Shown here piece after piece: positions 1 through 41,885 of a stretch of DNA of 64,000 nt. Numbering within the stretch: position 1 is the stretch's first letter; the number at the start of each line of letters is the position of its first letter. This stretch comes from Oikopleura dioica (Eukaryota; Animalia; Chordata), in contig OU015567.1 in the NCBI GenBank assembly GCA_907165135.1, positions 6,076,001-6,140,000 on the forward strand, given 5' to 3'. Under the pieces are notes generated by a model that was not told the DNA's origin, ran no database searches, and saw only the letters and a list, made by a program, of their open reading frames with translations. The translations under genes were made by a program, and so were the position numbers.

Positions 1-160
1 TGAAAACTCATGTTTTTCGTGAAAACTCAGCTTTTTCGCGAACACTCAGGATTTCGTGAAAACTCAGGTTTTTCGCGAAAACTCACGTTTTTCGTGAAAA
101 CTCGGGTTTCTCGCGAAAACTCAGGATTTCGTGAAAACTCAGGTTTTTCGTGAAAACGTT
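1..160. repeat. Degenerate ~20-bp tandem repeat (gaaaactcaggtttttcgc-like), truncated at window start
   Basis: About 7 imperfect copies of gaaaactca(g/c)..tttttcg(c/t) visible; unit is partly self-complementary (gaaaac...gttttc). Confidence 0.75.
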
Positions 161-2233: not shown

Positions 2234-2581
2234 GTCTAAACTAAGCAGAAATCATGGTTTATGGTTTTCTGAGTCAGGAACCTGAATTAATATACTGAAA
2301 TAATGAAAGTGAAAAATATTATGAATCCAAATCGGACTCATGGATTCCTTCCTCGTAAATCTGCATTCTCCCCCACCTCGTCACAGGCGAATAAGTTGGC
2401 CAATTTCAAGTTCTTTGTATGCCTATTTTGAAACGTAGAAGGAGTTAATTTCTGGCGTGGAAGAAGTCGTTTTTGTTCGCGCGCAGTTGACTGATTCAGA
2501 AAGACCAAAAAACTTAACCCGTAAAATCGTTTTTCAGGCAAGAAACTCAACGAAGAGAGAACGACTTCGAAAAAGTAAAAG

Positions 2582-3974: not shown

Positions 3975-4301
3975 ATAATAATCTATCTTTTTGTAAATTA
4001 ATTTAACACTATCAAAAAGAGCACCTCACTTGCCTTGAAGAACAACAAAAAGAGCGGCTCGACATTCAAACTAAAAAAAATAAAGCCTCAATACTTCAAT
4101 CTTCTCAAAACAAATTGATCGTAGCCGTAATACACCTTTCTCTGTTTTCATCACTTCTTATCATTTTATACCTTCTTTTTTCCTCTTTTTTTTCTTGCAA
4201 ATCTTGTACAGAGAGTTATCTACTTCAAATGAACCTATCTATTGCAAATGACATTACTGTATATTTTCAAGACTGAAGTCTTGGCTCGTCAACCTTTGTA
4301 C

Positions 4302-4470
4302 AAATACCTGAGTCAGGGTCTGAAAAGCTCATATGAAAAGCCGCGCAGTGGCTTATTTATAAACGAAGCCGCGAAGCGGCTTTGCTAATAATTCTATTTG
4401 CGGCTTCGCTTATAAATAAGCCGCTGCGCGGCTTTTCATATGAGCTTTTCAGACCCTGACTCAGGTATTT
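4302..4470. mobile_element. Palindromic MITE related to the 1988-2233 family (outer termini absent)
   Basis: aaatacctgagtcagggtctgaaaagctcatatgaaaagccgcgcag and its near-perfect inverse; shares cctgagtcagg and aagccgcg motifs. Confidence 0.75.
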
Positions 4471-4591
4471 CTATACAGTTTCCGTTGCTCAGACGGAAGT
4501 CATATGCAAAAATCTTCAAAAATAAAAAAAGTCCTACAAAAATAGTTTTTATACTTCGTTGTATTTACATTAAAATAACATATTCAAGTGC

Positions 4592-4960
4592 TTATACAGG
4601 GGTTCCTTCATCGACACAGCCGATAGAAAGGATCCTCTTGAAAAGAGTTGAAATAGAAGAAAAGTTGTTGTTGTAAATATCTTGTCGGATTCGGTACTCT
4701 TCGATTTTCTGAACCTTTCTTTTTTCAACATGGGCTTTTCGCGTCTTTGGTCGAAGAGAAGTTGATGCTTTTCGTGTTTTTCGGGAAGTTTCGACCTTTT
4801 TCAGCGAGCGAGCGAAGAAGGCGTCCATTTCGGAAAGGGCTAGGTCGGAAGTTCGGGCAGCAATCATTGCGTTGGTGTTGTTGATGATGATTGTTGGTTT
4901 TGATGATATTTTGCCAAATCGACTCATCATACCTTTATACTGAATGGTTTGGAGCGCCAA
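4592..4960 (-). CDS. Small basic hypothetical protein, copy A (paralog at 41203-41566)
   Basis: ORF ...[34 protein letters not shown]...GCVDEGTPV* is nearly identical to the ORF at 41203; true start uncertain. Confidence 0.55.
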   Translation of the reverse strand: MALQTIQYKGMMSRFGKISSKPTIIINNTNAMIAARTSDLALSEMDAFFARSLKKVETSRKTRKASTSLRPKTRKAHVEKRKVQKIEEYRIRQDIYNNNFSSISTLFKRILSIGCVDEGTPV

Positions 4961-6431: not shown

Positions 6432-9400
6432 ATGAGCTCCAGAAGAGCGAGGTCAAAATCATCAAATAGCCTCAAATCGGTAAAATAAAAAATATAATTT
6501 TAAGGATCCCCAGTAGTATTATCCTTTTCGTTTTGCGCGTTCGCACTATTCTTCTGAGAACAAACATCGCGGGGCGCGCGCTCATTGGCGGGCGCTCCGC
6601 CAATAGCGCTCAAAATTTAAAATTCAAGTTCAAAATCATTTTTCTCAAAAGAGAAGTTTTGCATGTTTTGTGTTGTTGTTTGTATTGTTTTGGATTGTTC
6701 AACACGAATTCTTGAATAATTCATGTAATAGCCAGTATTTTTACCAGGTTTTTTTATAGATTTGCTTTCGAGAAAAAACACGAGAAGATATGAAGAAAAT
6801 CAACGAAGAAGAAATAAAGATAAGTAAAAAATTCAATAATTTTCTAATTTCAACATTAAATTTGGTGAGCAATGCGCTCCAGACTTAAAATAAGGGTTGA
6901 ATAAAAACTGGGAGAGCTTGGTATCACTTGTTTGGATCTCGGTCCTGGGAAGTTTCTCGCTCATAATTAGGCTTTTTTAGTATTAGTTAGATTTTTAAGT
7001 CTGTGAGCATCGTGCTCCCATTATATTTAAAAATTTAATAGTTATAATTTTTCTAAATTCAAATCTAATCTAAAATGGTGAGCAATGCGCTCCAGACTTA
7101 GTTAGGCTTTTTAGTATTAGTTAGATTTTTTAGTCTGTGAGCACTGTGCTCCCGTTTAATAGAATTTAGTAGATAATATTATTAACACGTTAAAATAGAA
7201 AAAATAAACTATATTTTCAGCCCCAGCGACTGGAAGGAAGCTGACTTCGGCATCAAGCAGCTCTACGACGCTAACTGGATTATTTGCAACCCAACTACTC
7301 CAGGTAAAGCTTACCAATTTAGATCTTTCTTCACTAAAATTCTAGCCAACGTCATGCACGTCCATCGACGACAGATCGCTCTTCCATTCCGAAAGCCCTC
7401 ATTCTCATGACTCCCAAATCTCTTCTTCGACTTCCAGAAGCTCGATCCGAATGGTCAGAAATGGACCCTGGCACACAGTACAGACGACTCATCGGTGAAG
7501 AAGGCGCTGCCTCCAAGGTAAAATAATATCCTTCATTCATTACTTAAACTTTGCTCCATTCAGAACCCAGATAACGTCAAGCGACTGATATTCTGCTCTG
7601 GAAAGGTCTACTACGATCTCGTCAAAGAGCGAGCTGCCCGAGGCTTCGAAAACGATATCGCTATTGCACGAGTTGAACAGGTACTTTCAGCTTAGAGAGA
7701 TCAAAGGCTACATTTTATTCTAGGTCGCTCCATTCCCATACGATCTCGTCATTCCCGAGCTCGAGAAATACAAGAACGCCGAAGTCTACTGGGTCCAGGA
7801 AAAGCACAAGAACATGGGTTTCTACGACTTCTGCAAGCCTAGACTGCGAACTGCATCCAACTGGTCCCGCCGAGTCCACTACGCTGGCCGAGACTCCGCC
7901 GCCTCCGCCGCTGCTGGTTCCAAACAAGTAAGATTTCAGCCAAATTTGCAAAAGCTATTTTGCGTTTCAGGTTCACAAGATCGAGCAGGACAAATTCATG
8001 AACGACGCTTTCCGAAAGGGCGCCAAGGGTCGATTGTACAAATAAGCCACCTATTCTATCACTTACAAAGTACTGATTCCTTCCACAAAGAAAAACTATT
8101 GTCCTTAAAGCTTGTGTGTTCCCTTTTCTCACCTCCGTTCCTGTTGTTCAATAATTTATTAAAATAATGCACCTACATGCACAAACCTCCCTCTCTTCCC
8201 TTACGTTCAACAAAAAAAAACTTTCTAAAAATCCAACTACTAAAAATTTTGCCTGTTTTGTGTCTGAGGAAAAAAAAACTGAAACTCTTATTTATTCGGC
8301 CATTCGTTGTTTTGGCCCCGCAATTCATTGTAGCCTTCAGTAACTGGTATCAGCTAATCAAAGTAAAAATACAAACTGTGTGTACTAATAAGTTGAAAAT
8401 ACAGTAGAGCGCAGTCCGATACAGTGCTCAAAAAGTTACTTGTAATGAGCAGTAAGGCGTCGAGTAAACCGATTTTGCGAAGAGTTTATGATCATTTAGA
8501 CAGGTAAGAACGATTCTAGACGTCGAAACGGCTCTAGAAATGAAAAAAACATGGCTTATCAACTTTTCAGTGAGCCTGAAGATCTGAGAAAAAAGCTCTC
8601 TCGGGTGCGTGATTCTTTCGATGCTTTGGACAAAGAACTTTTTCCCTCTGGCAGGCCGAAAGATATCTACCGAGAACCCCAGCTTTTTCCTGGAACAGAA
8701 GATGGGAGGGATAAACATCATCGTCGAGTCAGAACTGTCAAGCCTGTGTTGAAACGAATCGTTGATCCGATCGAACCTTCCAGCGGAGAAGAAGATGATG
8801 ATCTTGTGATTGTCGATTCGAAGCCGGGAAAATCAAGAAAGCACCGGAAAAGGTCGGGTTTCCGGGAAAGAAGAAAGAAACGAAAGCGGTCGAGATCTTC
8901 TAGTCCAAGTTAGAGTTGCAATTTCCCTTAGAGCATGCCCATTTTGATCTTTCTTTTTTCAACTCTTTCAAAAGTCGAAAGCATCGCTCAAGATCGCGCA
9001 GTCCTATCCGCCGGCGAAAGAATCGATCCAGAAGTACAAGCAGAAGTATGCATTACTGCTCGAAGCATCGATCGAAAAAGTCCAGAAGTGAAAAGAGGGA
9101 GAAACGCTTGAGTCGTCGGAAAAGCAGTTCTACGAGTAAAACACAAGAAAAACTTCCTCAGACTCTTCCTCCTCGACAGAACAACGACGAGCTCATCGAA
9201 TCTCCCAAATGCTGTTTCTAGTGGCGATCAGTCCTGTTCAAGAACTGCTAGCTCTGATGTCTCTCGCACAGGCGTTCTCCAAAAAGAACAAAAGGGCAGT
9301 ACAACCGATGTCTGGTCAGAAGCATCAATCAGAAATGCTCGACTCTCGATGATGATCGTGCAAGTGGATAAAATCCGAAACAAGGTGAAAAAAAATCGAA

Positions 9401-12400
9401 AATTCCCGAAGCACACGCTGAAATCTGTTGGATAGTTCCTCATCATCAGAGCCGATTACTGGCCGCTCGACTGAATCTGATGGAGATAAGAATGCTGACA
9501 CTAGGACTCTCCCTGCTCGAGCTGTTGCTAGTCAACTCGACGCTTATTTTTGATGGTAGCTTGTCTTACAGCAAACGCACGGTAGAGCATCTTTTCCTAG
9601 GTAATATCATCTGCCATCGTGGACAAGTAAATCGGTGAATCTGTTTGTCTCATCCGCGAAATGTTCAACTACGCTCGCGACAATCAACCCTGCATTATTT
9701 TTATGGACGAAATCGACGCTATCGGTAGCAGACATCTTTCAGAAGAAATCTCTGCTGATTGTGGAATCCAAAGGTATCTTTACTTCATTTTTTCTAAAGC
9801 TTAATGTCGCTCGCAGTACTCTGATGGAATTGCTCAATCAAATGGACGACTTCGACACGCTCGGAAAGGTGAAAATGATCATGGCGACGAACAGACCTGA
9901 CACGCTGGATCCTGCACTTTTGCGACCCGGTTGTTTGGACAAAAAGATCGAAATCCGTATGAAGCCACCTTAGAAAATCCTTGATCTAAACTCAATTCTA
10001 GCACTGCTAAATGAGCAAGCTCGACTTGACATTTTGAAGATTCACTCGCGTCCACTCGCTACTCACGGAGGAATTGACTTCGAGGTAATCTTGTTTTCGC
10101 TTCTCTCCCTTTTTCACCCCTTTTTAATAGGCGGTTGCCAAGCACTCGGATACATTTAATGGAGCTGATTTGCGAAACATTTGTACAGAAGCAGGTCTTT
10201 TTGCAATTCGATCCGAACTCTTCAACAAAGCCGACCACTCACTTTGCAAGAACAACGAGACAAACTATTTCTCTCTCTCTCTTTTCTTTTCTTATCATCA
10301 CTGTTTCTTTTTGTCAACTAGTCATTCAATACAAAGGCGATTGTTCACACGCATTCTTTAATTCAAAAAAAACTCGTGTTTTATCTTTCCTTTGCAATAT
10401 AAGATTCATGATGGAAATAGAAAACTCAGCACTCGTTTGATATTTCTGACAGTTATCCTTATCTGTCTGCAGCGCGCATAAATTTAGACAGTTTTGTAAT
10501 GGTGAAATTGTTGGCCGATCTCAAAGTAGGAGAAATTCGTAAAGAGCTTGCTTCGGTGCAAGAAAGTACGAGGGGCAAGAAAGCTGAGCTTCTCCAAAGA
10601 TTATCCGACTTTTTGACAAGCAATGACTTTAATCCCGATACCTACGATTTTGCTACTCATTCTCTGATGCCGGTATCTGACGGCGAAGGAGAACTTCACA
10701 TTGTCGAAAATGAGCAAGAATCCTCTGCCACGGACGCAGAAGACCATGAAGTCCAAGAAATTCACGATGGAACCTTGAGAGTGACAGTTTTCGAGTCGAA
10801 GGATGAAGCTGACAGCCAATGTGATAATCTCCAAAATGGGGTTAAATTCGTGCACAAGCCCCATCGGTCGTTTCTACGACTTATGCAATCCAAGGGGGTC
10901 CCCAAACGCGGGAAAGATTGGCGATCATGGGAAACGTCGGCTATCGGGGTCATTCTACAGCCAATTTTTGGGTTGGATGGTTTTGGCGATTACGACTTTG
11001 CAGTTGTGGAGGAAATAAAAAAAACTCGAACTGGGCTAGAGTTTAGACATTGCATAGAGAGATTAGACTTGTTCTATTCTCTAAACATAACACCAGATGA
11101 GAATGGGGCTGTCTTAGGTGATGAGTACATACACACCATCGACAAACTTCTCTGTGCAGAAAAGAAGCGATTTTGTCTTCCCCAGCGCCACGAACTTACT
11201 TCATTTATTTATACACCAAAAAGCAAATGGAAGAGAAAAGAAAAAAAACAAGTTAAATTGCACATCTCGCCTGATAACTACCCCATCCTCGAATGGAAAC
11301 ATTTCCAGTCCATCGCCGAATGTTTCATCACCAAAAAACATCGGTACTACAAACTTTACATGAAAGAACGAAGCAAAATGACGAATGGAGTTTTCCGGAA
11401 ACATATACGACAATCAGCAAGTGATTTTCATGCCCGATATGGTGATATAACAGCAAGATCCCATCTTGTGCAAATTGATCATATTGATGATTTTGAAAAG
11501 TCAGTATGAGTAAATTTACCGTTTAATCATTTTTCTACTAGTGCGACTCGAATCGCCCAAGAGGGCGCGATAGCTGAGGGAGATGGAGATATCAGCCTTG
11601 CAATCGAAAAATACGCCGAAGCAATCGCCTTGGATCCGACGAACAAGGTCTACTTCGGTTATCGATCGGACGCGCTCCTCCAACAAGAGCAGTTCCCCGA
11701 AGCTCTTAGGTAATAAGATTCAATTTTTATCCATCTCTCCTTTATTTCTAGTGACGCGGTGAAAGCAATTGAACTTGAGCCCACATGGCCAAAAGGCTAC
11801 GCCTTGAAAGGGCAGATTTTGATGGCAACAAAGAAATTTGAGGAGGCAAAAGTCGAGTTCGGAATGATGAAAAAGTTCGATGAATCTCCTGACGAAGCTA
11901 TCGAATGGTTAAATATCTGCCAGCAAGGTAAATCAAGCTCAAGGATCACTTACTTATTTTCACTTTTAGAAGAGGAAAAGGAATGTGCTCATCGTGAACG
12001 AACTGAAGAAAGCGTCAATCAAGCTACGTTGGAAAGAAAGCAAAAGGAGCAAGAGATCGCTTCGGCAGAAGATGAACAGCCTGCGCTCGAAGTAAAACGA
12101 AACGAGTATCGAGAAAAAACTGGTGTCGTCTTGGAGAAAGTCAGCAAAAGTAAGTTGATTAAGTCAGAACAATATTTACAAGAATTCAGAGCCTGTTCGG
12201 CGCAGAAAGCGTTTGTTGAGCAGTGACGAGGAAGACGCAGCGGCTAGTTCAAGCGATGAGAAGAAGAAGAAACAACGAGACTCGGATGAAGAGACACCTG
12301 TTCTATCGCCTTTCAATCCCAAGCACAATAATACAGAAGTCACTGAAGACGATTCGTCTTCCGATGATGATTCCAACGCAGAGGTAGCAGGAATAATCAA

Positions 12401-15400
12401 TTATAGAGCTAAGTTTATCATTAAGGCCGATGTACAACAGCAAGCGATGCTTTCGTCGATCAGTGGTGAAGAAGCCGGACCACCAAAGCCACAGAAAGAC
12501 ACTTTGGTTAGTTCAAACGATGGAGCATCTACTGATATTGCGGCTCCAACGCCGGTGGTCGCTGCTTTGGATGATCAGAAGATCGCTGAAATGCGTGCCA
12601 AGATCTGGGAGTCGAACGAAAAGCTCAAATTGCTGGGCGCTAGAATCCAGAAGTTCGATAATAAGAGCGTTAACAGGATGAGGTTTCGCTCTATGATCGA
12701 CTTCTTGCGTCTAGCTTACGATCAAATGTCGAAAAAGCTTCATCATCTCGTCGAAACCGCCGGCAAGGAAGGGCTTGCACCCTTGGAAATGGAAGTCGCA
12801 AGTTTGGGAAAATCGCTGGAGCAGTTGTCTAGCGATATTTTTGACGAAGAGATGCACTGGCACAATCAGCAGCATGAATTGGACAGAATCAACCAAGAAA
12901 AACGGCAGCCACATCAGCCAGCGATCGCAACTCCTCATCAACACAGTCAACTGTCAAATATGCCGTCACAGCATTTTCAACCTCCTCCTCAAATGAGCTT
13001 CAACCAGCGATTTACTCCCCAAAATAATTTTGGCCCCCCTCAGCAGATTCCTCCTCATCATCAGATTCCTCCTCATCAGCAGATTCGTCCTCATCATCAG
13101 ATTCCTCATCACAGACAGTTCATGCAACCACTTGGCAACAGCCAGATGAATTTGCCACGCCGTGGACCAGTGGCGAAAAATGGATGCAAACCAGCGCAAT
13201 CCACAAAAAGAAAAAGAACAAAGAATTAAAATGAAGCTGTTCTTTTTGTATTTTATAATTTTGTATTTTTCGAGCTCTTTATAAAACCGGAAAAGCTGTC
13301 ATTTTAGGATCCCGGCTCTCCTACAATATATCTCACATTTATGTGTAGAAGTTTATTAATTTATTTTCAGGTTCAGTTTACAAAAGCGAAAATATTTCCT
13401 AGGAAGTTTTTCCTGATCCGCTTTGAAGAGAAACAAACTTGGTGCGAAGCTCGCGACGATTTCGTTTTCGAGCAAAGAATTCCAGAAGGAAGCGAAGAAA
13501 AGTCTCTTGATAAGAATGGAAAGTTTATACGTGTTTTGCGCGAACGAGCGGAAAAGTTACTCAAGAATGAGGGTGGAAGTCGGCGCTGCGAAGGTAAGTC
13601 CGATCTTAAAACGAGATCGTAGGGCCTTCATTCACGACCTGGAAGATGAATTTAAAACGGTCAGAGTTGCATCGCTGAATTCTCTTTGCACCTTAGCCGC
13701 TAAAGAGTCCACTGGAGATTTCGCCAAGCAGTCGATGGACTACATGGTAGACATGCTCAACGATGAATTGGAAATTGTTCGCCTGAATGCGATTAATAAC
13801 TGCGTAAAATGGCTTCGCGAGTTCCTGTTATGCTGGAAGATCAGAATGAGAATGTATTGACGAGCTGTTTGCCCGATTCTAGGCGAGAAATTAGGTAAAA
13901 TCATTAAAGAATGGGCAAAAAAGATAATTTACGGGCGAAAAATTTATAAAGAAAGCGCTATTTCTCCGTTTCATCTTTATTTCAGAATTTCTACCCATCG
14001 ATTACTGTCCTGCTGCCGTCTTCTGTCCAAAAATGCCTGAATCGAACAGTAGAAGAGCTCATCCAAAGTCTTCAAAAGTTCCCCGAGGACGAATCATCCA
14101 TTTACGTAGCTGTTTGCTGCCTGTTAAATGCCGACGTCCCTCTTCATGCACAACAATTGTTGGCTCACAAGATCCAGAGCCCATTAGAAAAAGAAGCTGT
14201 CTGAGGCCTGGATCTGTTGGAAATCTGCGTTCGATCCTCTGGAAAACTCTTTCACAATGAAATCGGAAAATATAGATTTTTAAATGAACTTATCCGCGTT
14301 GTCTCTCCCAAATATCTTGGACCAAGGTAACGTGGCTTAAAACCTGGCTTATCGCATGAGCATCAGTCCGCTGCGCTCCCCCTCTCGCCTCGAGTTCGGA
14401 GGACTTTCATTTGGAGGACCTCTTTTTGCGCCCTCACGCAGATGTAGGGACTTGTAATTTGCTTGACCTCCCAAAGAAAAGCCACTTGACTAAAATTTAT
14501 TTTGTTTTTAGGTCATCACCGCAGGTTAAAACTAGAATTATTGAATTGATGTATGGTTGGACTATTGCATTAAAAGGTTGAGCTTTTCTTATTCTTACAG
14601 CTACTGACTTTGAGTTTAGACCAAATAAAGATTGCTGATGCGTATTCAATGCTCAAGAAACAAGGCATCGTCAAGAAGGACCCGAAATTCGACGACAGAA
14701 GATTTCTCCCTACTCCTCAACAAAAAGAAAGGTACCAATTTAATCAAAATCAGTGTTGAAACATTGTTCAGGTGCGCATTAATAAAAGACGATGCTGAGG
14801 AAAAGCGACTGGCGGAACTTCTTGCGTCCAAGAATCCAGAAGACATCGCCCTGGCAAATGAAATGATCAAAACCATGTACGAGCAAGACAGTTAAAAGAC
14901 CGATCGAGAGGCGCGCAAAATGCTTTTGATGACAGAAGCGAAGGAAAAATACATGCTCATGGATGATATGATTGCTGCTGGAGCTACGTAAGGCCAAGTT
15001 CTTCTCTCATTTATTAACACTCTCTGAATAAAGAGCGAAATCGGCGATGGCAACAGTCTATTCGGACTTGGAATCAATGAGGCCACAGCTCTTCCGTCTC
15101 GCGTCAGAAGCAAATGAAAACAACGATGAGTTGATGGCGGTCCTCAGGCTAACAGATGAAGTCAATCGAGTCATCAATGTCGTGAAAGATAAATACCCCA
15201 ATGTAGTGGAGCTTTCGAAGTAAATTCTTTCTCATATTTCCTCCCTATTATTGTATTCTAGCGCTTCTACGCCAACTTCAAATTGAAGCAGCGTTCCATC
15301 ATCTGGTCTCACTGCAACATCAAGTCCGGATACCCAAACTTCTCGCCTCCACGACCTCGGCGTCGACTTGAACCTGCTCGGCCTCGAGGATGATCCTCCA

Positions 15401-30400: not shown

Positions 30401-33400
30401 GAGCGAACGATATCTCAATCCCTGGAGCTCCGGTGTTTTGCCACAACCACATTATCTCAAAACCAACTTCTTTGTTTTGATCAATTTTGAAATGCTCGGA
30501 AGACGCAATGCTGCTCAACTCGTGGTCAAAATAAAATTCACTCAGTCACTTGATGATAAACACCTTCTTCTGTTCATGCCTATAATTGAAAAAAAACTGA
30601 CAATTACTCCTGAAAATGATGTTACTGTAGAAGCTGTGTAATAAATCTGATTTAATCTCAACCGTAAAGATTGTTATAATTTTCATCCGACCATGAAATC
30701 TTATTTTGTTTCCCTTGCGACCTATTTGATCCGATCAAAAATACGGATTTTACGGCGTTCAAAGATATGATCTTATCTTTTGTCAGAAGATGTCTCAGTG
30801 AGTATGAAATTTTCTGATCTTGGCGTATATAACCGAGTAAGAGTCAATTTCTATTGTAAGATATTCTTATTTTTAAACAATGAAGATGACAACATGGAAG
30901 AAATAAGAGACGACGATTTTGAAAAAACCCACGAGAGTTTATTAACCTTAAAATGATTCATTATTCTTTAAAACTTTGTTATCCTTGAACAGCATTTATG
31001 CTCGTTTTAATTTTGTTACTGTTTCTTAAAATGATACCGTATTTTATCAGATACTCCTATTACCAAAACTAATTTTTTAACAAATTAAATCAAATAATAC
31101 ATATTTCTAAAATGATCTGATCGGTGAGATTTCAGACAGGACAATGAGATCGTAGGGTATAATCGGAACCGGTGTGTTTGACATCAGAAATCGAATTAAG
31201 GTATGTTATGCAAGGAAAATATATTTAACTCTATTCAGGATCCGGAATCCATTATTGCGAAGAAACGAGTGGAACTTTTTTGACCAAACTATAGGTCCCA
31301 GGTTTGATCCTTTTTGTAAAATTTTTTTTTCAATATTCTCTTAGAGTTCTTCTCTGACGAATATTCTTTCGCCATCGAGTTTTGCTGCAAGGAGTATCTG
31401 ATAAAAATCCGAAAAAGCAAAATCAAGATGCTCCTGTTGTTCCAAAGGTATTTTTGTCCTTCAGAGTTTTTCTCACGCGAATATTTTTTCGCCTTCGAGT
31501 TTTGATGCAAGGAGTATGTGATAAAAACCCAAATCAGCATAAGCACGATGTTCATGCTGCTCTAAAGGTATTTTTGTCTTTCAGAGTTTTTCTCACGCGA
31601 ATTTTTTCGCCTTCGAGTTTTGCTGCAAGGAGCATCTGATAAAAATCCGAACCAGCAGAAACAAACATGAACTATATCAGGAAATTAAGAAGAAAACAAG
31701 AGATATTCAGGCTGTTCCTTGATAGCAAAGTATTAAAGAAGGTATTTTAGTCTCGAAAATCACTTACAAAACTTTAAAATCAATTTTTGAAGGCTTTAAA
31801 TCCTGTTCAGCTGCTAAATCAAAATGAAAATGACAAAAAGAAAAGTAAGTGATATTAAGGCTGTTCTTGGATAGCGAAATATTGAAGAAGGAATGAATTC
31901 AGATCAAATGCGATGTCTGCTCACAGTCAGCACCACTACGCAGGCTGTTCTGGGATATCAAAGTATTGAAGAAGAAGTAAGTCTCAAAAATCACCTTCGA
32001 AAAATCAAAATTTTTTTTAGGCTTAAAATTTCGTTCAACCAATATTTGCAACCTTAGTTCTTGGAGAGCAAAGTATTAAAGGAAGCTTAAATCTCGGTCA
32101 AGAGCTTTGCACCAAACAACTACCAAGCCGCACAAAAAAACAAATAAATTCTGTATCTGCTTATCTGCAAACCAATAGAAATAAAATTATATTATTTTTT
32201 CAGTTTATTTTCGAAAAGAGTTTCTTAATTGTCGCAGTATTTTCAATTGCATTTTCTGTGAATAATTTCATAAAAGACAACAATGATTTCTCACATTCGA
32301 GTGACCAAAAAAGAAAAGTGATGGCAAAAAGACCACAGTTAGAATGAGTTCTCATTTGAATTTTCGGGGAAGTGATGAGAGTTCGATCACCCATCTCAGT
32401 TTTGAGAAATAGGTGGAGATTTTCGTATGCACTATTTTTTATGTAGCCGAGAGGGTCCATTATTTCGATAACATCATTTTTTACTATAAGACTTATCCAA
32501 TGCGTTCCATTTGTATGAATTAGAAAGCCAACAGGAAAAGAAAGAATTGTGAATTTGATTAAATCGTCAGCAAAGAAAATTCCCCCAAAATTCGCGAGAC
32601 CGTGCAAAAGCTCTTCAGCGCTAAATAAATTAAAGAATCAGCGATTAACTTATTTCAGACCTTTCGGCGTCCATTTGATCTTCTCTTCTTTCCTGATTTC
32701 TTTTTTGATTTCCTTTTTTTTCCGGCGCCTCTGATCCTCTTTGGGACAAATCGAATTTTACGGCTAAGCTTATTTTTATCAATAAATTTTTATTTCCCCT
32801 TACCAGAGCCCTTTCTTTGGCATCTCTTCAGTCAATTTTTATGAATAATGAGAGAAACAAATTTAAAATCTAACACGTTCGAATATTTACACTGGGTAAA
32901 TTTACAAATCATCGAGAATGATCTGAATATGATCACTCATCGATCTTTAGAACAAGCGAAATGTAGGTCACATGACTCGGTAGCCTAGAATATTATTTTA
33001 AAAAGAATTTATTTTAAAAAATATCACCTGAGCGAGACATAAAATTCTCCTCCGCTTATCATATCCCACTGCTCAGCTCCTGATGGCGAGTCAAATTGAA
33101 CCCCGTTTGGAATCGTTAGAAGTATTTTATCCGGATTAAAAACCGATGGATTGATCAGATTGCACCGAATGTCCATAAAATCAAGCTGATCGTCATTTGA
33201 TCGGCAGCAGTAGCTCATAACTGATACATAAGATCCCTGGAGAGGATGTCTGAACCACCATTTAATCATCTTCTCTCCGGGTAAATTTGTAATATCTGCC
33301 GAGTCAGAATTTAAACGGATCAGTCGCATTCTTAAAAAAACCATCTTCAACTATCTTTCATGAGGGTCTTTTTCGGAGAACAAGATTCAGTTCATTCTCA

Positions 33401-36400
33401 TAAAGAGGTCGCAAAAGTTTTCCACGAGGTCCTTCGACACGATAGTAACAAATGTCGCCTGATTTTTGCACTTTCCAAATCGTGTAGAGGTCTTTTGTCC
33501 ATTTCATCATGTAGCCTTTCTCAAATGTTGCTTTTCGCTTTGCTTTTGGACTCGCAATAATAATTGGAATTCGCACCTTATCGCCAACTCCAAACTTACA
33601 GATCAAGTTTTTAGTTTCTGCATTTGGAAATTTTTTATGGTAAAATTCACGAAAATTGTCGATAGTTATATCTATTGGGGCAATCCCAAGCCGGCTATGC
33701 TTCCGTTTGTTTATGTTATCGCTTAATTGAAGATAGACATTTATCCAAGTTTTAGTTCTATTTTCGTCCATAAACTGTTGGATCATTTTTTTAAAAGTTC
33801 GGCTATATAATAAAGATCTATTAACGAAAAAATATTGATATTACATGAAGCGCTCAGCCATCGTAGCTTTGTGAGGTCCTCCGAGCTTGTATTGGACCAT
33901 TCCAAATTGTTCAACGAGAACTTTATTAATGAATCCTTAAAAAATCAACTTATAATCGATACTAGAGAAGTTGACGCTTGCCTTCGACACGCGGCGCGTA
34001 TTCTTTTCCACCATCGCTCGAAAAAGTCGAAGGTATATGCTCCATCGACTCAATTATTTCTTTCAATGAGGCCGCAGTTTCCTCAGAAGTAAGTGTTTTC
34101 TGAGCTTTTACCCAGTTTCTACTGCTATAAACATCAATCACGACTAAAATGTATTTATATCCGCGATTTTGACGACCATACATACTGTAATCACTAAAAC
34201 AATTTTTTTTTTCAGTTTTTATTGAGAAATTTGCTTACATAGTATCAGATTGAATTTGAGTATAAGGGCCATAAACAACTGTTCGTCTACGCTTAAATTT
34301 TCTAATGATACGCCGATGTCGAGATAGAGTTTCTTTTTCACGCAAATAACGCTGTAGATCAGTTGAATAAGCAGTGATCTGTTTCGGATCAATGTAAAGC
34401 TGGTCAAGTTTAATCTTCTTCTGAGGAGGAGTTTGATCCGGAGCTTGCGCTGCCACTGTCGGAGCCGCTGCTGTCGCTCTCGCTGTCTGATCTTCCACTT
34501 GATCCGGAATCCGAATATCGGGCTCCTGAGGTGGTTCCACCTGATTCAAATTGTTTTCGACTTGCCGGGCTGTTTGGAGGGGCGATTTGTCCGATTTTCT
34601 CTTCCTTGTTGTCATCGCATGTGAGTTTTTGCTTCTTTTTGCTTTCTGGATCATCTGGATACCCGTCCTCGTCCGACCTCTTTGCGAGCGGTCGTTTCCA
34701 CGCGCTACTCGAGGAGCTTCCTTCTCCAAGGCGTTGTTCTCGTCTTCGTCCCGCTTTTTTGAGTAGTTTCGAAGCTTTATGACTTTTCTTGTCATTGTTT
34801 CCGAAGTACCCTTGGACATTTAGTTTTTTTTCAAGTTTTCCTTAAAGTCATACATTTATCTAAAGTTTATATCTAACCTACCAGTAAATATTCCTTCTTC
34901 AGTCTTGTAGACCTTGCAATGGCGTTTTATCTCAGCGAGTGGAAAAATAACACTTCGTGGCATAATTCTGAATGAGTTATGCCGAGGCAATCCGATGAAT
35001 TCATGAAGTTATTTTTTCACGCCTTTTTATTTACACAAATCAGGATTAAATTCAGAATAGAGTTTTGAAATGCCACAATGGAATTCTTCGCGGAGCTTAC
35101 GGCAACTAGTTATTACCACAAGAACAGAAATTTCTTTTTGGACGGTCAGATAACAGAGATATTGAAACGTCCAAACGATTCCCTCCAAAACTACAAAGCT
35201 GGAGATAAAATTTCGATAAAATTCTCACCGGAAATTGCAGGAGAATTTTCTTGGCTCATTGGAAACAGAATTTGCTTTTTTAAAGCGGTTCGTGCGGAGC
35301 CGAAGAAATTCCCTAAAAACGGTGTTACTCACGAGCTTATCGTCACTGAAGCAAAAAAATGCGTTCTCTCTCTGGCAGAGTCATAGACGACATCAAATTT
35401 CACCACCCCGCATCTATTCAAGTCATCGGCGCAAGCGGGTAAAGTTCTTATCTTTTTTCGAGAATTAAAAATATTTTCAGAACTGGAAAAACAAAATTTG
35501 TTGAAAAGCTGATACGACATCAATTTTTTACAAAAAAAATCAGACATGTTTTTTATTTTGGAGCCATCAATAATTTACCGATCGATTGGGACAACAAGTT
35601 GCCTGATGATATAACTATAAAGTACCAAGAAGGGCTTCCTACAACTTCAGATTTCATAAATGTTCCGAAAAGAAGCGTCATCGTGATTGATGATCAGTTC
35701 AGTGACGCTGTTAATTCACCTGATATCAATAGAGCTTTTACTAACGACAGAAGAAAATTTGATTTTAATCTCATCTTGATTACTCAAAACCCATTTGAAA
35801 AAGGGAAATTTACGACTGGAAATCGGCGTAATACTGAGATCACTGTCTTGCTAAGAATGTACGCCGATCAAAGTCATTTCAAAGTCTTCGGCAAACAATA
35901 TGGCGTGGAGCGCGAGTTAGAAGAAGCTGTCAAGGACATGAAATCAAGACCTGAAGATGTGCATGCCCATATTGTTATAAATGGCAGTATAAAACTCAAA
36001 GATCAAAACTTAAGAGTCATGTCAAATATATTTGGTGATTCTCCTTATTTGCAACCCTCACTTCCGATCTGCTACACTCAAAAACATCATTGAAATAAAT
36101 CATCCTCTGTTTTTAACCTTGCTTTACTGTATTTATTTGATAAATCATTTTTTGATGAGCAGTTTTTTTCAAATTTAGGACGAATCTTCGGTATCCGATT
36201 CGTATCCTGGAAGGTAGACTGGACTTGGAATTTCTGCTTTGAGCCATCCTAATTCGGGGTCAGCGAGGAGGTCTGGGGTGATTGCAAGGTCTCCAAATTT
36301 TTCTAAATTGATTTTATAATAAGTTTCCAAGGATTTTTTTAACCGTCTACCTTGAATCGAAATCTGAGCCATTTCGAAGAACTCCTGCATCGCCCTACAG

Positions 36401-39400: not shown

Positions 39401-41885
39401 GCGCGCCTCTTGCGTAGCGCTTGAATATTCTGAGCTTACATGCACGCGCTCAGCAGAGCGACGCGCTCAGCAGAGTAGCGCACTCAGCATATTGAGAAAC
39501 ATGGGAGTAAAATCAGTATACAAACACATTCTTGCAGAGGTGCGACTTAAATTGAATGCGCGCGAGCAATGTTTGTTTTCCGAAGAATAGTGCGAACGCG
39601 CAAAACGAAAAGGATAATACTACTATCCCCCCTCGTCAAGATGACTTTAAATTGAAGTCGAGGGTTGGATCTAAAAGTGTCTATTGAGATTAAGGGTGTA
39701 TCTAAGATAGCTTCGGAGTAAAACTTGCTCCTATGAAGCCCAAATTCGCAATTCTTGATGAGGGGGGTCCTTAATATTTATAATTGACAAAGAAACTTTT
39801 AACTAAAAATGATAGAAAGGCGATTCCTCTTCTGTCGAGCTCTGGTTCGTCTCTGGCGACGGGGAAGATTTCGGAGAACAAGAAGAAATCAACCCAGAAG
39901 ATCTGGTTTTTTGGTCAAAGAACTCGGTCCTCTGGCAAAACGTCTGGTCAAAAGACCCGTCAAAACGAACTTCAGAAGAGAAAAAACTACAGAAAGAGAT
40001 TTACGAGAAAATTGAAGAAAATGGAATTCCGAATATTTTGAGGTCCGAAATTTGGCCGACGATAGCAACAGAGTCGGAGTTCGAATTGCTCAAGCTTCAG
40101 GAAGAATACATGCGATTAAGGGGCAAGAAATCAAGCTGGCAGTCGGAAATCGCAGCGGACATAACGCGGACGTTTCCCGGCCACCCAAAATTCGCAAAAG
40201 GCGACGAGGCACAGATGGAGCTCTTCAGAATTCTAACCGCTTACAGTTTGCACGATCCCGAACTCGGCTACAGCCAGGGTACGAATTTTATCGCCGCCAC
40301 GATTGTTCTCATGATGCCAGAAGAACGCGCATTCGCCGTTTTCGCGTCACTGATGAAGCGTTTCAAGTAAATTCATCACTCACTTCTCCATCCATTTACT
40401 TGTAGCTTGCGATTACTCTATTTGAACGAGTGCGAAGGGTTGAAACGCCAGCTTCATTTTTTGTCCGAAACAGTTCGAATCAAGAGCAGCAAATTAAAAA
40501 CACACCTGGATGATCAAATGATCGAACCAGGAATTGGGCTCGGCAACCTGTGTAGAAAACCTGAGTCAGGCCCTGACTCAGGGTCCGAAAATTACCAATG
40601 AAAAGCTGCAGTGTCAGAAATCCGGGGTAATTTTGCCAGGCAGCTTTTCATCAAAGATTTTTCGGACCCTGTGTCAGGCCCTGACTCATGTTTTCTACAC
40701 AGGTTGCCGATCCCAACCTAGGAATGTACGCTACTCAGTGGCTCCTTTCCTGCTTTACTTCTCGCTTTCCCCTTGCATTTTCCAAGCGAATCCTCGATTT
40801 ATTGCTCCTGAAACCAGATGACACACAAGAACTGCTTATGAAGCTAACCACTTCGATGCTTCTATTCCACCGTAGCGAAATCTTCGAGTGCGAGATCGAC
40901 GACTTTATGGATTATTTCCGATCAGTTCTGCCGGCTCATTTCGCCATTCGAACGCTCCCGGAAGATGGAGACGGGCCGAGTTATTACGAACACAGCGAAA
41001 AATTTTTACGATTTGCAAGAGGCTTCCGGTAAGAGATCTTTTAAGTCTCCTCTTTGAACGGTCCGTAGATTGGAGCGATGGAGGAGAATTATGATTGAGC
41101 ATTCTTGGAGTCAGCAACGATCAAAATGCAAAAGGAAGAGGCAACAGAAAAACTTTTCGTAAAATTTAATATTTTTATTTACAAAATATTTGTTACAGAT
41201 GTTCATACAGGAGTTCCTTCATCAACACAGCCGATAGAAAGGATCCTCCTGAAGAGGGTTGAAATAGAAGAAAAGTTGTTGTTGTAAACATCTTGTCGAA
41301 TTCGATACTCTTCGATTTTTTGAACTTTTCTTTTTTCGGCATGGGATTTTCGTGTCTTCGGTCGGAGAGAAGTTGATGCTTTTCGTGTTTTTCGGGAAGT
41401 TTCGACCTTTTTCAGCGAGCGAGCGAAGAAGGCATCCATTTCGGAGAGGGAGAGTTGAGAAGATTGAGTGGCGATCATTGTTGGTTTTTGATGATATGAT
41501 TGGATTTGATGGTGAACTGATTTTGATCCGCGTATTTATGCTAGCCTGGATCTGGTGCGCCGCCAAAATCGAGCAGGTGGGAGAAAACTGCAGCTGATTT
41601 TGCTGCTAATGAGGTTCATTAGCGAGATCAATTGTTTGATAAGATTAATTACTGATAAGCAATTAAGATTATTAGATATCGATAGTTGCTATTTTAAAAT
41701 GTAAGGTATATTCTGTTTCCTCAAAAAGAGCAGCTTCAAATAAGGACGAACTGATAAAAGAGCTGTCTGCGAAAAACGAAGCCTTGTTGGTGGAAAACGA
41801 AGATCTAAGAATCAAAAACGATCACCTGAAATCACAACTTGATGAAATCAGCGGAAGATGGACCGAAATCGCGCTCAGAAAATAA
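6432..41885 (+). CDS. TBC-domain Rab GTPase-activating protein (RABGAP1/EVI5-like); intron 1 contains the 33-kb element
   Basis: Exon 1 6432-6479 ([18 protein letters not shown] donor at 6480) joins in frame to the exon at 39793 (KLLTKNDR). TBC motifs [35 protein letters not shown]; C-terminal coiled coil, stop 41883-41885. One -1 frameshift in an A-run near 40020 (possible sequencing error). Confidence 0.8.
6512..6570 (+). repeat. Left terminal inverted repeat of the Polinton
   Basis: Starts with AGTAGT, typical of Polinton termini; reverse complement of 39566-39624. Confidence 0.95.
7221..8045 (+). pseudogene. OGDH: 3' fragment of 2-oxoglutarate dehydrogenase E1 (captured, introns retained)
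   Basis: Spliced [14 protein letters not shown]|[32 protein letters not shown]..|[19 protein letters not shown]..|[23 protein letters not shown] matches the OGDH C-terminus. No upstream exons; 1-bp deletion at ~7397. Confidence 0.85.
8551..9221 (+). CDS. Arg/Ser-rich hypothetical protein (2 exons)
   Basis: ORF 8551-8913 spliced (gttag...aaaag) to an RSRSRS-rich exon ending at 9221; low complexity, no family recognised. Confidence 0.5.
9506..10217 (+). pseudogene. PSMC6: Internal fragment of 26S proteasome AAA-ATPase Rpt4 (captured, introns retained)
   Basis: [12 protein letters not shown]|[38 protein letters not shown]|[38 protein letters not shown]|[13 protein letters not shown]|[18 protein letters not shown]. 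In-frame TAA at 9628-9630; Walker A lost; both ends truncated. Confidence 0.9.
10499..13229 (+). CDS. SAP-domain + unknown domain + TPR + coiled-coil + Q/H/P-rich protein, apparently intact
   Basis: [28 protein letters not shown] is SAP-like. Later exons give three TPR-like repeats ([34 protein letters not shown]). Introns I could place keep the frame to TAA at 13229; C-terminal 18-bp QIPPHH repeats. Confidence 0.7.
13620..14123 (+). pseudogene. INTS4: Internal HEAT-repeat fragment of Integrator subunit 4
   Basis: [44 protein letters not shown] / [18 protein letters not shown]|[10 protein letters not shown] / [17 protein letters not shown] matches INTS4; two frameshifts, one retained intron. 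Confidence 0.8.
14124..16169 (+). pseudogene. GGA: GGA adaptor fragment (VHS-GAT-hinge-partial GAE), truncated at both ends
   Basis: [48 protein letters not shown] (VHS); [21 protein letters not shown] (GAT); [17 protein letters not shown] (GAE). Stops at 14202-14204 and 14893-14895; many short introns retained. Confidence 0.88.
17708..18149 (+). CDS. Small acidic coiled-coil protein (3 exons)
   Basis: [26 protein letters not shown]|..[19 protein letters not shown]..|..[13 protein letters not shown] joined by two short GT-AG introns. Confidence 0.55.
18431..19131 (-). CDS. Hypothetical protein (multi-exon)
   Basis: 157-aa ORF followed by a short intron-like gap and a further coding-like exon; no family recognised. 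Confidence 0.4.
19500..21040 (-). CDS. Hypothetical multi-exon protein with acidic C-terminal region
   Basis: Exons [13 protein letters not shown]|[13 protein letters not shown]| and a D/E-rich exon ([17 protein letters not shown]) separated by ~40-50 nt introns; 3' end approximate. Confidence 0.45.
21481..23459 (+). CDS. Mucin-like single-pass membrane protein with long repetitive cytoplasmic tail
   Basis: S/T-rich region with 14-aa repeats ([14 protein letters not shown]); TM segment [23 protein letters not shown]; short-intron exons leading to 24-bp RPEPLQES repeats (stop at 23459); N-terminus uncertain. Confidence 0.55.
23658..28115 (-). CDS. polB: Protein-primed family B DNA polymerase of the Polinton (6 exons)
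   Basis: VAFDIET (Exo I), [10 protein letters not shown] (Exo II), [16 protein letters not shown] (Pol I), [13 protein letters not shown] (Pol II), CYADTDS (Pol III), KTPGLFKIE. Introns at 27849-27892, 26422-26466, 24748-24789, 24366-24407 and ~23879-23950/23956; 1-nt frameshift in T7 run at 24096-24102. Confidence 0.93.
28340..29282 (+). CDS. Multi-exon hypothetical Polinton protein, divergent from polB
   Basis: [19 protein letters not shown]... with several short intron-like gaps and an acidic last exon ending TGA at 29282; exon structure approximate. Confidence 0.45.
29361..30641 (+). CDS. Major capsid protein (double jelly-roll, Polinton PY-like), intronless
   Basis: 426 aa; [17 protein letters not shown]; [14 protein letters not shown]; [11 protein letters not shown]; VDVLVDG..PGYPL; NFFVLINF; LVVKIKF follow the Polinton MCP pattern from memory; sits among the core genes. 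Confidence 0.8.
   Translation: MFSFSKTDKFDTLGYEDCKIQEAAPYCNTDDTLEFHIVPQKRYFKACDSRLHFHIEIPENHVLDNDFCAKLFKGLPKIEIAEDPITSKSCDLDSAFSSHFLNKSLFDQTTIDSTFPIMGVYDIFEADQDDIGRSIIENRKMYAKEFLKEIEFEGKTYNTKWLRYEFKIPINHGIARAPIILPAGLGIHLSFERAPAKFSLLKKKSMLDATDDVGDVVEIDYDFPDPVVKLVRPVFKAMFVFSESLEREMKKYATSKFETTFLDYCIRRPTLDKGDTDYTVNLTKGAFPKYAVLSVTSLKRSHGDYKQSLTKLERGNIEQVDVLVDGSSLPGYPLKTDMDFYENFLMMSERYLNPWSSGVLPQPHYLKTNFFVLINFEMLGRRNAAQLVVKIKFTQSLDDKHLLLFMPIIEKKLTITPENDVTVEAV
31343..31680. repeat. Three copies of a 120-bp tandem repeat
   Basis: agagtt..tct..cgaat.tt.tttcgcc.tcgagttttg.tgcaaggag.at.tgataaaaa.cc begins at 31343, 31463 and 31583. Confidence 0.85.
32200..32823 (-). CDS. Adenain-like (C5) cysteine maturation protease
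   Basis: GTHWISL (His), EIMDPLG (Asp), [14 protein letters not shown] (Gln/Cys). Intron 32621-32660 links MDAES|AEELLHG; a further upstream intron at 32769-32803 gives an in-frame ATG at 32823. Confidence 0.88.
32933..33350 (-). CDS. Small beta-rich protein, candidate minor capsid (penton)
   Basis: 108-aa ORF plus a short last exon ([16 protein letters not shown]); [21 protein letters not shown] weakly recalls the Polinton penton motif; lies between INT and PRO. Confidence 0.4.
33358..34819 (-). CDS. int: Retroviral-like (c-integrase) DDE integrase, 4 exons, intact
   Basis: QIQSDTI|[42 protein letters not shown]|[25 protein letters not shown]. Introns 34194-34238 (GT), 33936-33981 (GC), 33803-33844 (GT) all keep the frame. 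Confidence 0.93.
35078..35386 (+). CDS. Small hypothetical protein overlapping the ATPase start
   Basis: 102-aa ATG ORF with alternating hydrophobic pattern; overlaps the ATPase ATG (35359) by 28 nt. Confidence 0.5.
   Translation: MEFFAELTATSYYHKNRNFFLDGQITEILKRPNDSLQNYKAGDKISIKFSPEIAGEFSWLIGNRICFFKAVRAEPKKFPKNGVTHELIVTEAKKCVLSLAES
35359..36093 (+). CDS. A32/FtsK-like genome-packaging ATPase (2 exons)
   Basis: [27 protein letters not shown]|TGKTKF (Walker A split by 42-nt intron 35439-35480), VIVIDD (Walker B), LILITQN. Confidence 0.9.
36175..36915 (-). CDS. Hypothetical Polinton protein (at least 2 exons)
   Basis: 143-aa ORF plus downstream exon ending [10 protein letters not shown]; no family recognised. 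Confidence 0.5.
37028..37513 (+). CDS. Hypothetical Polinton protein (161 aa, Cys-containing)
   Basis: ATG ORF followed by aataaa at the stop; no family recognised. Confidence 0.5.
   Translation: MKREIFPYNFFITKCKKQPNCLRNHLLVQLIRSDFLKKGYFSFKQRSGFCVLFSAPIDFVRPIYVTVDRSDRIERLDEGTRRRLLIRKNRGSLKIAIPARVFEHNCESNVCKDRTKILKNLRVLFHTDSYLPDMVITSESEIGQLFSAGLWDQPKTVTFHQ
37755..38397 (-). CDS. Putative secreted or signal-anchored protein (2 exons)
   Basis: [25 protein letters not shown] hydrophobic leader; in-frame GT-AG intron (ITP|ENQALKK); helical basic body. Confidence 0.55.
39566..39624 (-). repeat. Right terminal inverted repeat of the Polinton
   Basis: Reverse complement of 6512-6570; ends ...TACTACT followed by TSD ATCCCC. 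Confidence 0.95.
39625..39774. mobile_element. TTAA-flanked 148-bp MITE (Kolobok-like termini), split by the Polinton; its first 8 bp are at 6504-6511
   Basis: Rejoined site reads TTAA-GGATCCCCCCTCGTCAAGA...TCTTGATGAGGGGGGTCC-TTAA, a near-perfect TIR pair with TTAA duplication. Confidence 0.8.
40534..40716. mobile_element. hAT-like MITE forming an entire intron of the TBC gene
   Basis: TIRs ttgggctcggcaacctgtgtagaaaac / gttttctacacaggttgccgatcccaa; flanks accaggaa/cctaggaa (6/8); removal of 40531-40721 restores IEPG-MYATQW. Confidence 0.85.
41203..41566 (-). CDS. Small basic hypothetical protein, copy B, nested antisense in the last TBC intron (41160-41730)
   Basis: Near-identical to 4592-4960 across the C-terminal ~90 aa; polyadenylation-like aataaa downstream. 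Confidence 0.55.

What the first reader, a model, noticed from the sequence alone, without database searches (positions are those of the whole stretch)
6512..39624. 33.1-kb Maverick/Polinton inserted as one unit, with full core gene set plus ~17 kb of cargo
Seen: AGTAGT termini, 43-bp perfect TIR, 6-bp TSD ATCCCC, and pPolB, integrase, ATPase, protease and MCP. Known: Polintons are usually ~15-20 kb, have 6-bp TSDs and AG-starting termini. Inference: this is an unusually large, cargo-carrying polintovirus-like element. About half of it is non-core DNA, comparable in principle to the cargo-carrying Mavericks of nematodes. I cannot check whether this family is already catalogued.
Basis: partly seen in the sequence, partly recalled or inferred. 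Interest (0 to 1): 0.92.

Follow-up and report, generated by a model that had tools for sequence, protein, structure and literature searches.

The report
Decayed Maverick carrying host gene pieces
This is a real but decayed virus-like Maverick/Polinton transposon, made unusually long (33 kb) by a roughly 9-kb block of host-type gene pieces; it is one more example of a known kind, not a new one.

Summary
The ends are as described. A 59-nt terminal inverted repeat has its first 43 nt perfect, with AGTAGT...ACTACT tips and a direct 6-bp ATCCCC duplication on both sides. This is the canonical chordate Maverick end motif.

Core genes:
- Protein-primed polymerase B: present, but with five in-frame stops and probably one frame change.
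- rve integrase: present, with at least one stop and one frame change.
- Clan-CE cysteine protease: a weak match.
- Major capsid protein: intact at 426 aa. A confident model (pLDDT 93) matches double jelly-roll capsids.
- Packaging ATPase: not confirmed, and no canonical P-loop occurs in any frame.
- Penton protein: not found.

The "17 kb of cargo" splits in two. About 9 kb (7.2-16.2 kb) has host-like GC and carries pieces of cellular genes, all on one strand: an OGDH C-end, an Rpt4 C-part, a GGA piece, a SAP-domain ORF and others. About 8 kb is unassigned, with virus-like GC. Without the host-like block the element is about 24 kb, within the known range.

Distant relatives are annotated as fused gene models in Oikopleura dioica. 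Whether the block moved with the element could not be tested, because I did not fetch other copies. Verdict: a fossil copy, a new member of a known kind, of moderate interest.

The parts
6506..6511 (.). left copy of the 6-bp target-site duplication (ATCCCC)
6512..6570 (+). left terminal inverted repeat, tip AGTAGT
6571..7199 (.). left subterminal AT-rich stretch (GC about 0.30) with short direct repeats
7200..16200 (+). host-like block: GC 0.40-0.47 like the flanks, with pieces of cellular genes all on the + strand
   Evidence: composition; domains; no blastn similarity to either flank
7727..7960 (+). 2-oxoglutarate dehydrogenase E1 C-terminal piece. It is certainly a fragment: only about 1.2 kb separates it from the terminal repeat
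   Evidence: Pfam PF16870 E 2e-19; matches residues 806-882 of the 895-residue chain 7wgr_A; upstream frames gave no hit
9806..10220 (+). 26S proteasome ATPase Rpt4/PSMC6-like piece: C-terminal part of the AAA domain plus the lid, in two frames, with no Walker A anywhere upstream
   Evidence: PF00004 E 9e-11; PF17862 E 1e-7; best PDB hits are Rpt4/PSMC6 at E 2e-19; no P-loop pattern
10499..11509 (+). intact 336-aa ORF with an N-terminal SAP domain and no detectable homologue
   Evidence: PF02037 E 7e-6; word-based search found nothing
11759..13229 (+). two long open frames (155 and 338 aa; acidic, coiled and Pro/Gln-rich) with no family hit
13627..13803 (+). weak HEAT-repeat-like stretch, below Pfam's cut-off
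14788..15979 (+). GGA-like piece: N-GAT extension, plus a very weak adaptin-ear-like stretch
   Evidence: PF18308 E 6.5e-9; PF02883 E 0.085
16201..24005 (.). unassigned part of the element with GC 0.28-0.47 (mostly 0.33-0.42), ORFs on both strands without any family hit, and repeat-encoded ORFs at 21481-22029, 22112-22540 and 23121-23459
24006..27849 (-). [quoted passage not shown]
   Evidence: weak PF03175 and PF00136 hits; tblastn to P0153 E 8e-58 and 2e-35; P0153 carries PF03175 at 53 bits; counts
29361..30641 (+). major capsid protein, double jelly-roll, intact (426 aa)
   Evidence: 287 relatives; model pLDDT 93, pTM 0.90; Foldseek hits to iridovirus, PBCV-1, mavirus and Sputnik capsids at E 1e-12 to 1e-18, TM 0.55-0.66
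31343..31700 (.). 120-nt tandem repeat (about 2.7 copies) between the capsid and protease genes
32200..32637 (-). Ulp1/adenain-like (clan CE) cysteine protease, a short ORF
   Evidence: PF02902 E 1.9e-4, 21.7 bits against a cut-off of 20.7; PF00770 E 0.018; PDB search uninformative
33361..34819 (-). retroviral-type (rve) integrase, broken: at least one in-frame stop and at least one frame change
   Evidence: PF00665 E 2e-7, 31.5 bits against a cut-off of 32.6; tblastn to P0063 E 1e-11; P0063 carries rve; counts
35443..36093 (+). candidate packaging ATPase with a degenerate P-loop and a Walker-B-like run; unconfirmed
   Evidence: translation; no hits; no canonical P-loop
36175..38460 (-). unassigned minus-strand ORFs near the right end
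39566..39624 (-). right terminal inverted repeat, tip ACTACT on the + strand
39625..39630 (.). right copy of the 6-bp target-site duplication (ATCCCC)

Best explanation
A Maverick/Polinton (polintovirus-like element) entered this site once. Its rve integrase made a 6-bp staggered cut, which left ATCCCC on both sides of the AGTAGT...ACTACT terminal repeats (shown). From what is established for the family, such elements copy themselves with a protein-primed polymerase B, integrate with the integrase and encode a double jelly-roll capsid (inferred). This copy is a fossil: the polymerase and integrase reading frames are broken and the ATPase has no proper P-loop, while the capsid gene is still open (shown). 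Its length comes from about 9 kb of host-type DNA in the accessory region just inside the left terminal repeat. That block has host-like GC and pieces of cellular genes all in one orientation (shown). I infer that the block was already in the element when it integrated here. The argument is that the element looks only a few per cent decayed (3 mismatches in 59 nt of terminal repeat; five stops in 1276 polymerase codons). By contrast, the OGDH-like piece is certainly truncated at the block's edge and the Rpt4-like copy lacks its Walker A. A copy taken from working genes after such a recent insertion would be expected to be more complete. The other 8 kb of 'cargo' has the composition of the viral part and is probably lineage-specific accessory or decayed viral genes.
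For: Ends and duplication. The end motif 5'-(AGT)2//(ACT)2-3' with a perfect 6-bp duplication is the commonest one in vertebrate Mavericks (PMC8097293). pPolB. Integrase. Protease. Capsid. Breaks counted. Host-like block: composition; domains; no P-loop. Accessory regions flank the core modules in vertebrate Mavericks, and nematode Mavericks carry a high-GC host-derived region next to one terminal repeat. Relatives of the capsid, polymerase and integrase are gene models of Oikopleura dioica.
Against: Only one copy was seen, so carriage of the block is not shown. No library hit supports the ATPase and no penton gene was found. The rve hit (31.5 bits) and the window's own polymerase hits lie just under Pfam's cut-offs. 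Only open frames of 70 codons or more were scanned, so short exons of the Rpt4- and GGA-like genes may have been missed and those genes may be more complete than they look. The in-frame stops could in principle lie in introns, but five introns that all keep the frame are unlikely, and the alignment to P0153 runs through them. The source organism of the window was not identified.
Confidence: 0.68

Rival explanations
1. The Maverick integrated as an ordinary element of about 24 kb, and the 9-kb host-type block was put into it later, at this locus, by repair of a break, ectopic recombination or another mobile element. The 33-kb unit never moved.
For: The block has the GC of the surrounding chromosome. 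At least its OGDH-like piece is a truncated gene. No second copy was examined.
Against: No duplication, inverted repeat or other insertion signature bounds the block. It has no similarity to either flank. The pieces look more eroded than the modest decay of the element would allow for a later arrival. That last point is an inference.
Confidence: 0.25
2. The element is intact and potentially functional, and the apparent stops and frame changes lie in short introns of a host with very small introns.
For: If the host is Oikopleura, its introns peak at 47 bp (PMC5240408). The capsid ORF is intact.
Against: All five polymerase stops lie in one continuous frame, which introns would have to preserve five times. 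The alignment to the relative runs across them. Intact vertebrate Mavericks have intronless ORFs. No canonical P-loop exists in any frame. No intron model was built here.
Confidence: 0.05
3. The pair of ends is not one element: it is either two separate Maverick ends enclosing host DNA or an assembly join, and the matching hexamers are chance.
For: Half of the interval is not core viral DNA.
Against: A 6/6 match of the flanking hexamers in direct orientation has a chance of about 1 in 4096. The window has no Ns. Only two copies of the tip exist in 64 kb. Viral-type composition continues from 16.2 kb to the right end.
Confidence: 0.03

Closest known systems
Vertebrate Mavericks (Barreat and Katzourakis 2021, PMC8097293)
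   Same: Identical end motif 5'-(AGT)2//(ACT)2-3' and a perfect 6-bp duplication. The terminal repeat length (59 nt) is within their 46-1447 bp range. The same hallmark genes are present, with accessory regions outside the core, and most copies are mutationally degraded.
   Different: At 33.1 kb it exceeds their 12.7-24.6 kb range. The gene order and orientation (pPolB, capsid, protease, integrase, ATPase-like) do not follow their two inward-facing modules. The capsid and polymerase are too divergent for Pfam or word-based searches.
Cargo-carrying Mavericks of nematodes (Widen et al., bioRxiv 10.1101/2022.07.12.499685)
   Same: A region next to one terminal repeat that stands out by higher GC and host-type genes.
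   Different: There the region is 2-5 kb with complete, functional cargo genes shared among copies and species, and the elements carry a fusogen. Here it is about 9 kb, it includes at least one clear gene fragment, no fusogen was detected, and sharing among copies is untested.
Polintons with transposon cargo in insects (bioRxiv 10.1101/2025.02.07.637071)
   Same: Polinton-related insertions enlarged by foreign DNA.
   Different: There the cargo is other transposons. No transposase or reverse-transcriptase domain was found in this element.
Pack-MULE and Helitron gene-fragment capture (reviewed in PMC6431247)
   Same: Pieces of host genes lie inside the borders of a DNA transposon.
   Different: This is a different transposon class with a different replication mode. 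It is also not shown here that the pieces come from unlinked loci rather than from one contiguous host segment.
Maverick-like gene models of Oikopleura dioica (CAG5089850.1, CAG5104698.1; MAV class in PMC5240408)
   Same: The same capsid family, with polymerase and integrase relatives.
   Different: Only 27-34% identical in protein, so a distant lineage. The closest capsid relative (73%) is from a metagenome contig.

Membership tests
Maverick/Polinton | terminal inverted repeats | tested here: met
   59 nt, 3 mismatches, 43 perfect from the tip
Maverick/Polinton | 6-bp target-site duplication | tested here: met
   ATCCCC on both sides, in direct orientation
Maverick/Polinton | conserved end motif 5'-(AGT)2//(ACT)2-3' or (AG)3//(CT)3 | tested here: met
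   AGTAGT...ACTACT; motif as given in PMC8097293
Maverick/Polinton | [quoted passage not shown] | tested here: met
   The window's own Pfam hits are below cut-off, but tblastn to P0153 gives E 8e-58, and P0153 carries PF03175 at 53 bits. The gene is broken.
Maverick/Polinton | retroviral-type (rve) integrase | tested here: met
   PF00665 E 2e-7, 31.5 bits against a cut-off of 32.6; relative P0063 at E 1e-11. The gene is broken.
Maverick/Polinton | double jelly-roll major capsid protein | tested here: met
   Model pLDDT 93; capsid matches at TM 0.55-0.66, E down to 7e-18
Maverick/Polinton | adenain/Ulp1-like cysteine protease | tested here: met
   PF02902 at 21.7 bits against a cut-off of 20.7; a weak PF00770 hit. 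The support is thin.
Maverick/Polinton | FtsK/HerA-type packaging ATPase | tested here: inconclusive
   Only a degenerate GKT and a Walker-B-like run; no hit in Pfam, PHROGs or PDB; no canonical P-loop
Maverick/Polinton | minor (penton) capsid protein | tested here: inconclusive
   No frame of the element matched one by sequence.
'Intact' Maverick in the sense of PMC8097293 | all conserved ORFs open and intronless | tested here: not met
   Polymerase: five stops and probably one frame change. Integrase: at least one stop and one frame change.
Cargo-carrying Maverick (nematode type) | host-derived region of distinct GC next to a terminal repeat | tested here: met
   7.2-16.2 kb, GC 0.40-0.47 against mostly 0.33-0.42; cellular domains
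Cargo-carrying Maverick (nematode type) | complete cargo genes | tested here: not met
   The OGDH-like piece is a C-terminal fragment. The Rpt4-like copy lacks a Walker A. The SAP ORF is open but has no homologue.
Cargo-carrying Maverick (nematode type) | the same cargo in other copies or species | not tested
Transduplicating transposon (Pack-MULE-like) | fragments from several unlinked host loci | not testable with these tools

The most novel reading that the evidence does not exclude
The 9-kb block is true mobile cargo. On this reading, a larvacean Maverick lineage picks up multi-gene stretches of host chromosome in its accessory region and moves them inside a capsid-encoding element. That would make it a vehicle for gene duplication, exon shuffling or horizontal transfer in a genome otherwise poor in transposons.
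Probability: 0.2. Interest if true: 0.65.

Novelty: new member of a known kind. Interest (0 to 1): 0.38.

Why it matters
It adds a well-delimited Maverick from a probable tunicate host. Its capsid family (287 representative clusters) has no Pfam model and no named relative, and its polymerase is very divergent. It also shows that two annotated Oikopleura dioica 'genes' are fused Maverick remnants. The block of host gene pieces is a candidate case of host DNA uptake by a Maverick outside nematodes and insects, but one decayed copy cannot show that. For genome annotation, the practical gain is that about 33 kb, including several apparent cellular gene pieces, should be masked as transposon-borne pseudogenes.

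Tried and rejected
- Alternative genetic code (only TGA as stop) to explain the TAA/TAG stops in the polymerase. Rejected: the capsid ORF ends at a TAA exactly where its relatives end.
- Block as a copy of neighbouring host DNA. No blastn similarity between the element and either flank.
- Block as a nested transposon. No bounding inverted or direct repeats, and no transposase or reverse-transcriptase domain in any scanned frame.
- PHROGs scan of ten frames: nothing useful.
- PDB sequence searches of the polymerase pieces, capsid, ATPase-like frame and protease: nothing useful.
- Word-based homologue searches with the largest polymerase piece and the SAP ORF: no hits.
- First capsid model from 5 sequences: poor (pLDDT 49). 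Replaced by the 40-sequence model.
- Rfam and tRNA scans of the window: empty.
- Pfam scan of all 40 capsid relatives: no family.
- The source organism could not be identified from the window itself.

Full report
OBSERVATION. The interval is bounded by an inverted repeat at 6512-6570 and 39566-39624. It is 59 nt long with 3 mismatches, and the 43 nt nearest the tips are perfect. The tips read AGTAGT and ACTACT. The hexamer ATCCCC lies directly outside both tips, at 6506-6511 and 39625-39630. It is in direct orientation, so it is a duplication and not part of the inverted repeat. The 24-nt tip occurs only at these two places in the window, with none expected in 100 shuffles. Beyond about 60 nt the two ends are no more alike than random sequence.

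WHAT THE ENDS MEAN. A survey of vertebrate Mavericks reports 5'-(AGT)2//(ACT)2-3' as the commonest end motif. It occurs together with perfect 6-bp duplications. That survey gives terminal repeats of 46-1447 bp and element sizes of 12.7-24.6 kb (PMC8097293). The ends here therefore meet the family's definition in detail, but the length of 33.1 kb does not.

CORE GENES. Because the tools take no protein read through a stop, every open frame was searched on its own.

- Polymerase (24006-27849, minus strand). The window's own Pfam hits to DNA_pol_B_2 and DNA_pol_B are below cut-off. The largest pieces hit nothing in Pfam, PHROGs, PDB or the word-based search. The link came indirectly. One long protein returned by the capsid search, P0153, aligns to this region by tblastn at E 8e-58 and 2e-35. 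P0153 itself carries DNA_pol_B_2 at 53 bits. The translations also show polymerase-like palm and exonuclease motifs. The gene is broken: five in-frame stops (3 TAA, 2 TAG) lie in one continuous frame of 1276 codons. The other two frames have 54 and 115 stops. There is probably one frame change as well.
- Integrase (33361-34819, minus strand). It has an rve hit at E 2e-7, with 31.5 bits against a cut-off of 32.6. It aligns to P0063 at E 1e-11, and P0063 carries rve. It has at least one in-frame stop and at least one frame change.
- Protease (32200-32637, minus strand). It passes the Peptidase_C48 cut-off narrowly and also touches the adenovirus protease family.
- Capsid (29361-30641, plus strand). 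This is an intact 426-aa ORF. It has four close relatives, the best at 73% identity, all from metagenomes. A profile search found 287 representative clusters. None of 40 aligned members hits Pfam or PDB by sequence. A model from the 40-sequence alignment is confident (pLDDT 93, pTM 0.90). It matches the double jelly-roll capsid proteins of an iridovirus, PBCV-1, mavirus and Sputnik, and of many giant viruses and virophages, with TM 0.55-0.66 and E down to 7e-18.
- ATPase. The frame at 35443-36093 shows a GKT and a Walker-B-like run. Nothing matched in any library. The generic P-loop pattern is absent from all six frames of the whole element.
- Penton. No penton protein was found.

THE 'CARGO'. 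Composition splits the non-core half in two.

From about 7.2 to 16.2 kb the GC is 0.40-0.47, like the flanking chromosome. The remainder of the element is lower on average, mostly 0.33-0.42, with short local excursions from 0.28 to 0.47. The high-GC block carries cellular-type pieces, all on the plus strand:
- The C-terminal end of 2-oxoglutarate dehydrogenase E1 (E 2e-19), matching residues 806-882 of an 895-residue solved chain.
- The C-terminal part of the AAA domain and the lid of the proteasome ATPase Rpt4/PSMC6.
- An open 336-aa ORF with a SAP domain and no homologue at all.
- Two further long open frames without hits.
- A weak HEAT-like stretch.
- A GGA N-GAT piece.

The dehydrogenase piece must be a fragment. 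Only about 1.2 kb lies between it and the terminal repeat, and the frames there match nothing. The Rpt4-like copy has no Walker A in any frame. Short exons may have been missed, so the Rpt4- and GGA-like genes may be less incomplete than they look.

The block is not a copy of either flank, and no insertion signature bounds it. The remaining 16.2-24.0 kb has ORFs on both strands, some encoded by short tandem repeats, and no family hits. I take it for lineage-specific or decayed viral accessory DNA. Without the host-like block the element measures about 24 kb, inside the published range.

SURROUNDINGS. The right flank from 43 kb on is a dense run of intact host exons with strong domain hits: amine oxidase, SWIB, KH, a DDB1/CPSF1/SF3B3-type double propeller, an FGGY kinase and ankyrin. 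This contrasts with the scrappy pieces inside the element. The immediate flanks are repeat-rich. No Rfam family and no tRNA was found.

HOST. The window's organism was not identified directly. The two long relatives are annotated gene models of Oikopleura dioica, CAG5089850.1 and CAG5104698.1. Each is a fusion of a capsid-like part with a polymerase-like or integrase-like part. They are only 27-34% identical to this element. A 'MAV' class exists in the O. dioica transposon annotation (PMC5240408).

MECHANISM.
- Shown: one integration event with a 6-bp duplication; hallmark genes of a self-synthesising, capsid-encoding element; present-day breakage of the replication and integration genes.
- Inferred from the family's established biology: protein-primed replication from the terminal repeats, integrase-mediated insertion, and a possible particle stage.
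- Inferred here: the host-type block sits in the accessory region next to a terminal repeat. This is where vertebrate and nematode Mavericks also keep non-core genes. It was probably acquired before this integration, because the element itself looks only a few per cent decayed, whereas the OGDH-like piece is truncated and the Rpt4-like copy is incomplete.
- The rival, that the block entered the resident copy later, cannot be excluded with one copy.
- Introns as an explanation of the stops are unlikely. Five of them would each have to preserve the frame, and the alignment to the relative runs across them.
- An alternative genetic code was rejected.

NOVELTY AND SCORE. Cargo-bearing Mavericks are known from nematodes (10.1101/2022.07.12.499685) and insects (10.1101/2025.02.07.637071). 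Degraded copies are the rule (PMC8097293). This is a new, divergent member of a known kind with an unusually large host-derived block. Interest is moderate.

STEPS LEFT OUT. I did not fetch the DNA of other copies or relatives. These would have been the contigs behind the metagenome capsid hits, the O. dioica loci, or a collection scan with the terminal repeat. This is why mobility of the block as a unit remains untested.

My own reasoning also worked through the positions of stops and of a frame change in the polymerase and integrase from those bounds. After noticing this I printed only counts and outer bounds. tblastn stretch bounds inside the broken genes were still printed afterwards. In my reasoning I also recalled a few short catalytic motifs and part of a cellular protein sequence (the proteasome ATPase) from memory. 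The consensus lines printed by the alignment tools were not used.

Noticed in passing
window 1983-2238, 4291-4481, 40534-40716, 42979-43073: A family of palindromic, MITE-like repeats (arms 36-117 nt, 81-97% complementary) occurs on both sides of the element.
   Followed up: partly
window 4594-4905 and 41205-41511: A 312-nt dispersed repeat, 88% identical, has one copy in each flank in the same orientation. It is not part of the element.
   Followed up: partly
window 2-170 and 61134-61309 (inverted partner near 61424-61471): Tandem arrays with periods of 19 nt and 11 nt in the host flanks.
   Followed up: no
window 31343-31700: A 120-nt tandem repeat (about 2.7 copies, 84% matches) lies between the capsid and protease genes. 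Its function is unknown.
   Followed up: no
window 21561-21686 and 23159-23392: Repeats of 42 nt and 24 nt lie inside open frames and encode short peptide repeats in the unassigned part of the element.
   Followed up: no
window 6836-7180 and 39358-39489: Subterminal short repeats lie just inside both ends: 25-49-nt direct repeats on the left and two inverted arrays of a 17-nt unit on the right. They may be binding sites but were not tested.
   Followed up: no
proteins P0153 (CAG5089850.1) and P0063 (CAG5104698.1), Oikopleura dioica: Two annotated host gene models are fusions of a capsid-like part with a polymerase-like or integrase-like part, so they look like Maverick remnants called as genes.
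   Followed up: partly
window 24006-27849, minus strand: Between two palm motifs of the polymerase there is a Cys/His-rich stretch that reminded me of a Vsr-type endonuclease insert. That likeness is from memory only, and no library hit supports it.
   Followed up: partly
window 43300-64000: A dense run of intact host genes on the right flank (amine oxidase, SWIB, KH, DDB1/CPSF1/SF3B3-type propellers, FGGY kinase, ankyrin). One exon is 922 codons long, so the host genome is compact.
   Followed up: partly
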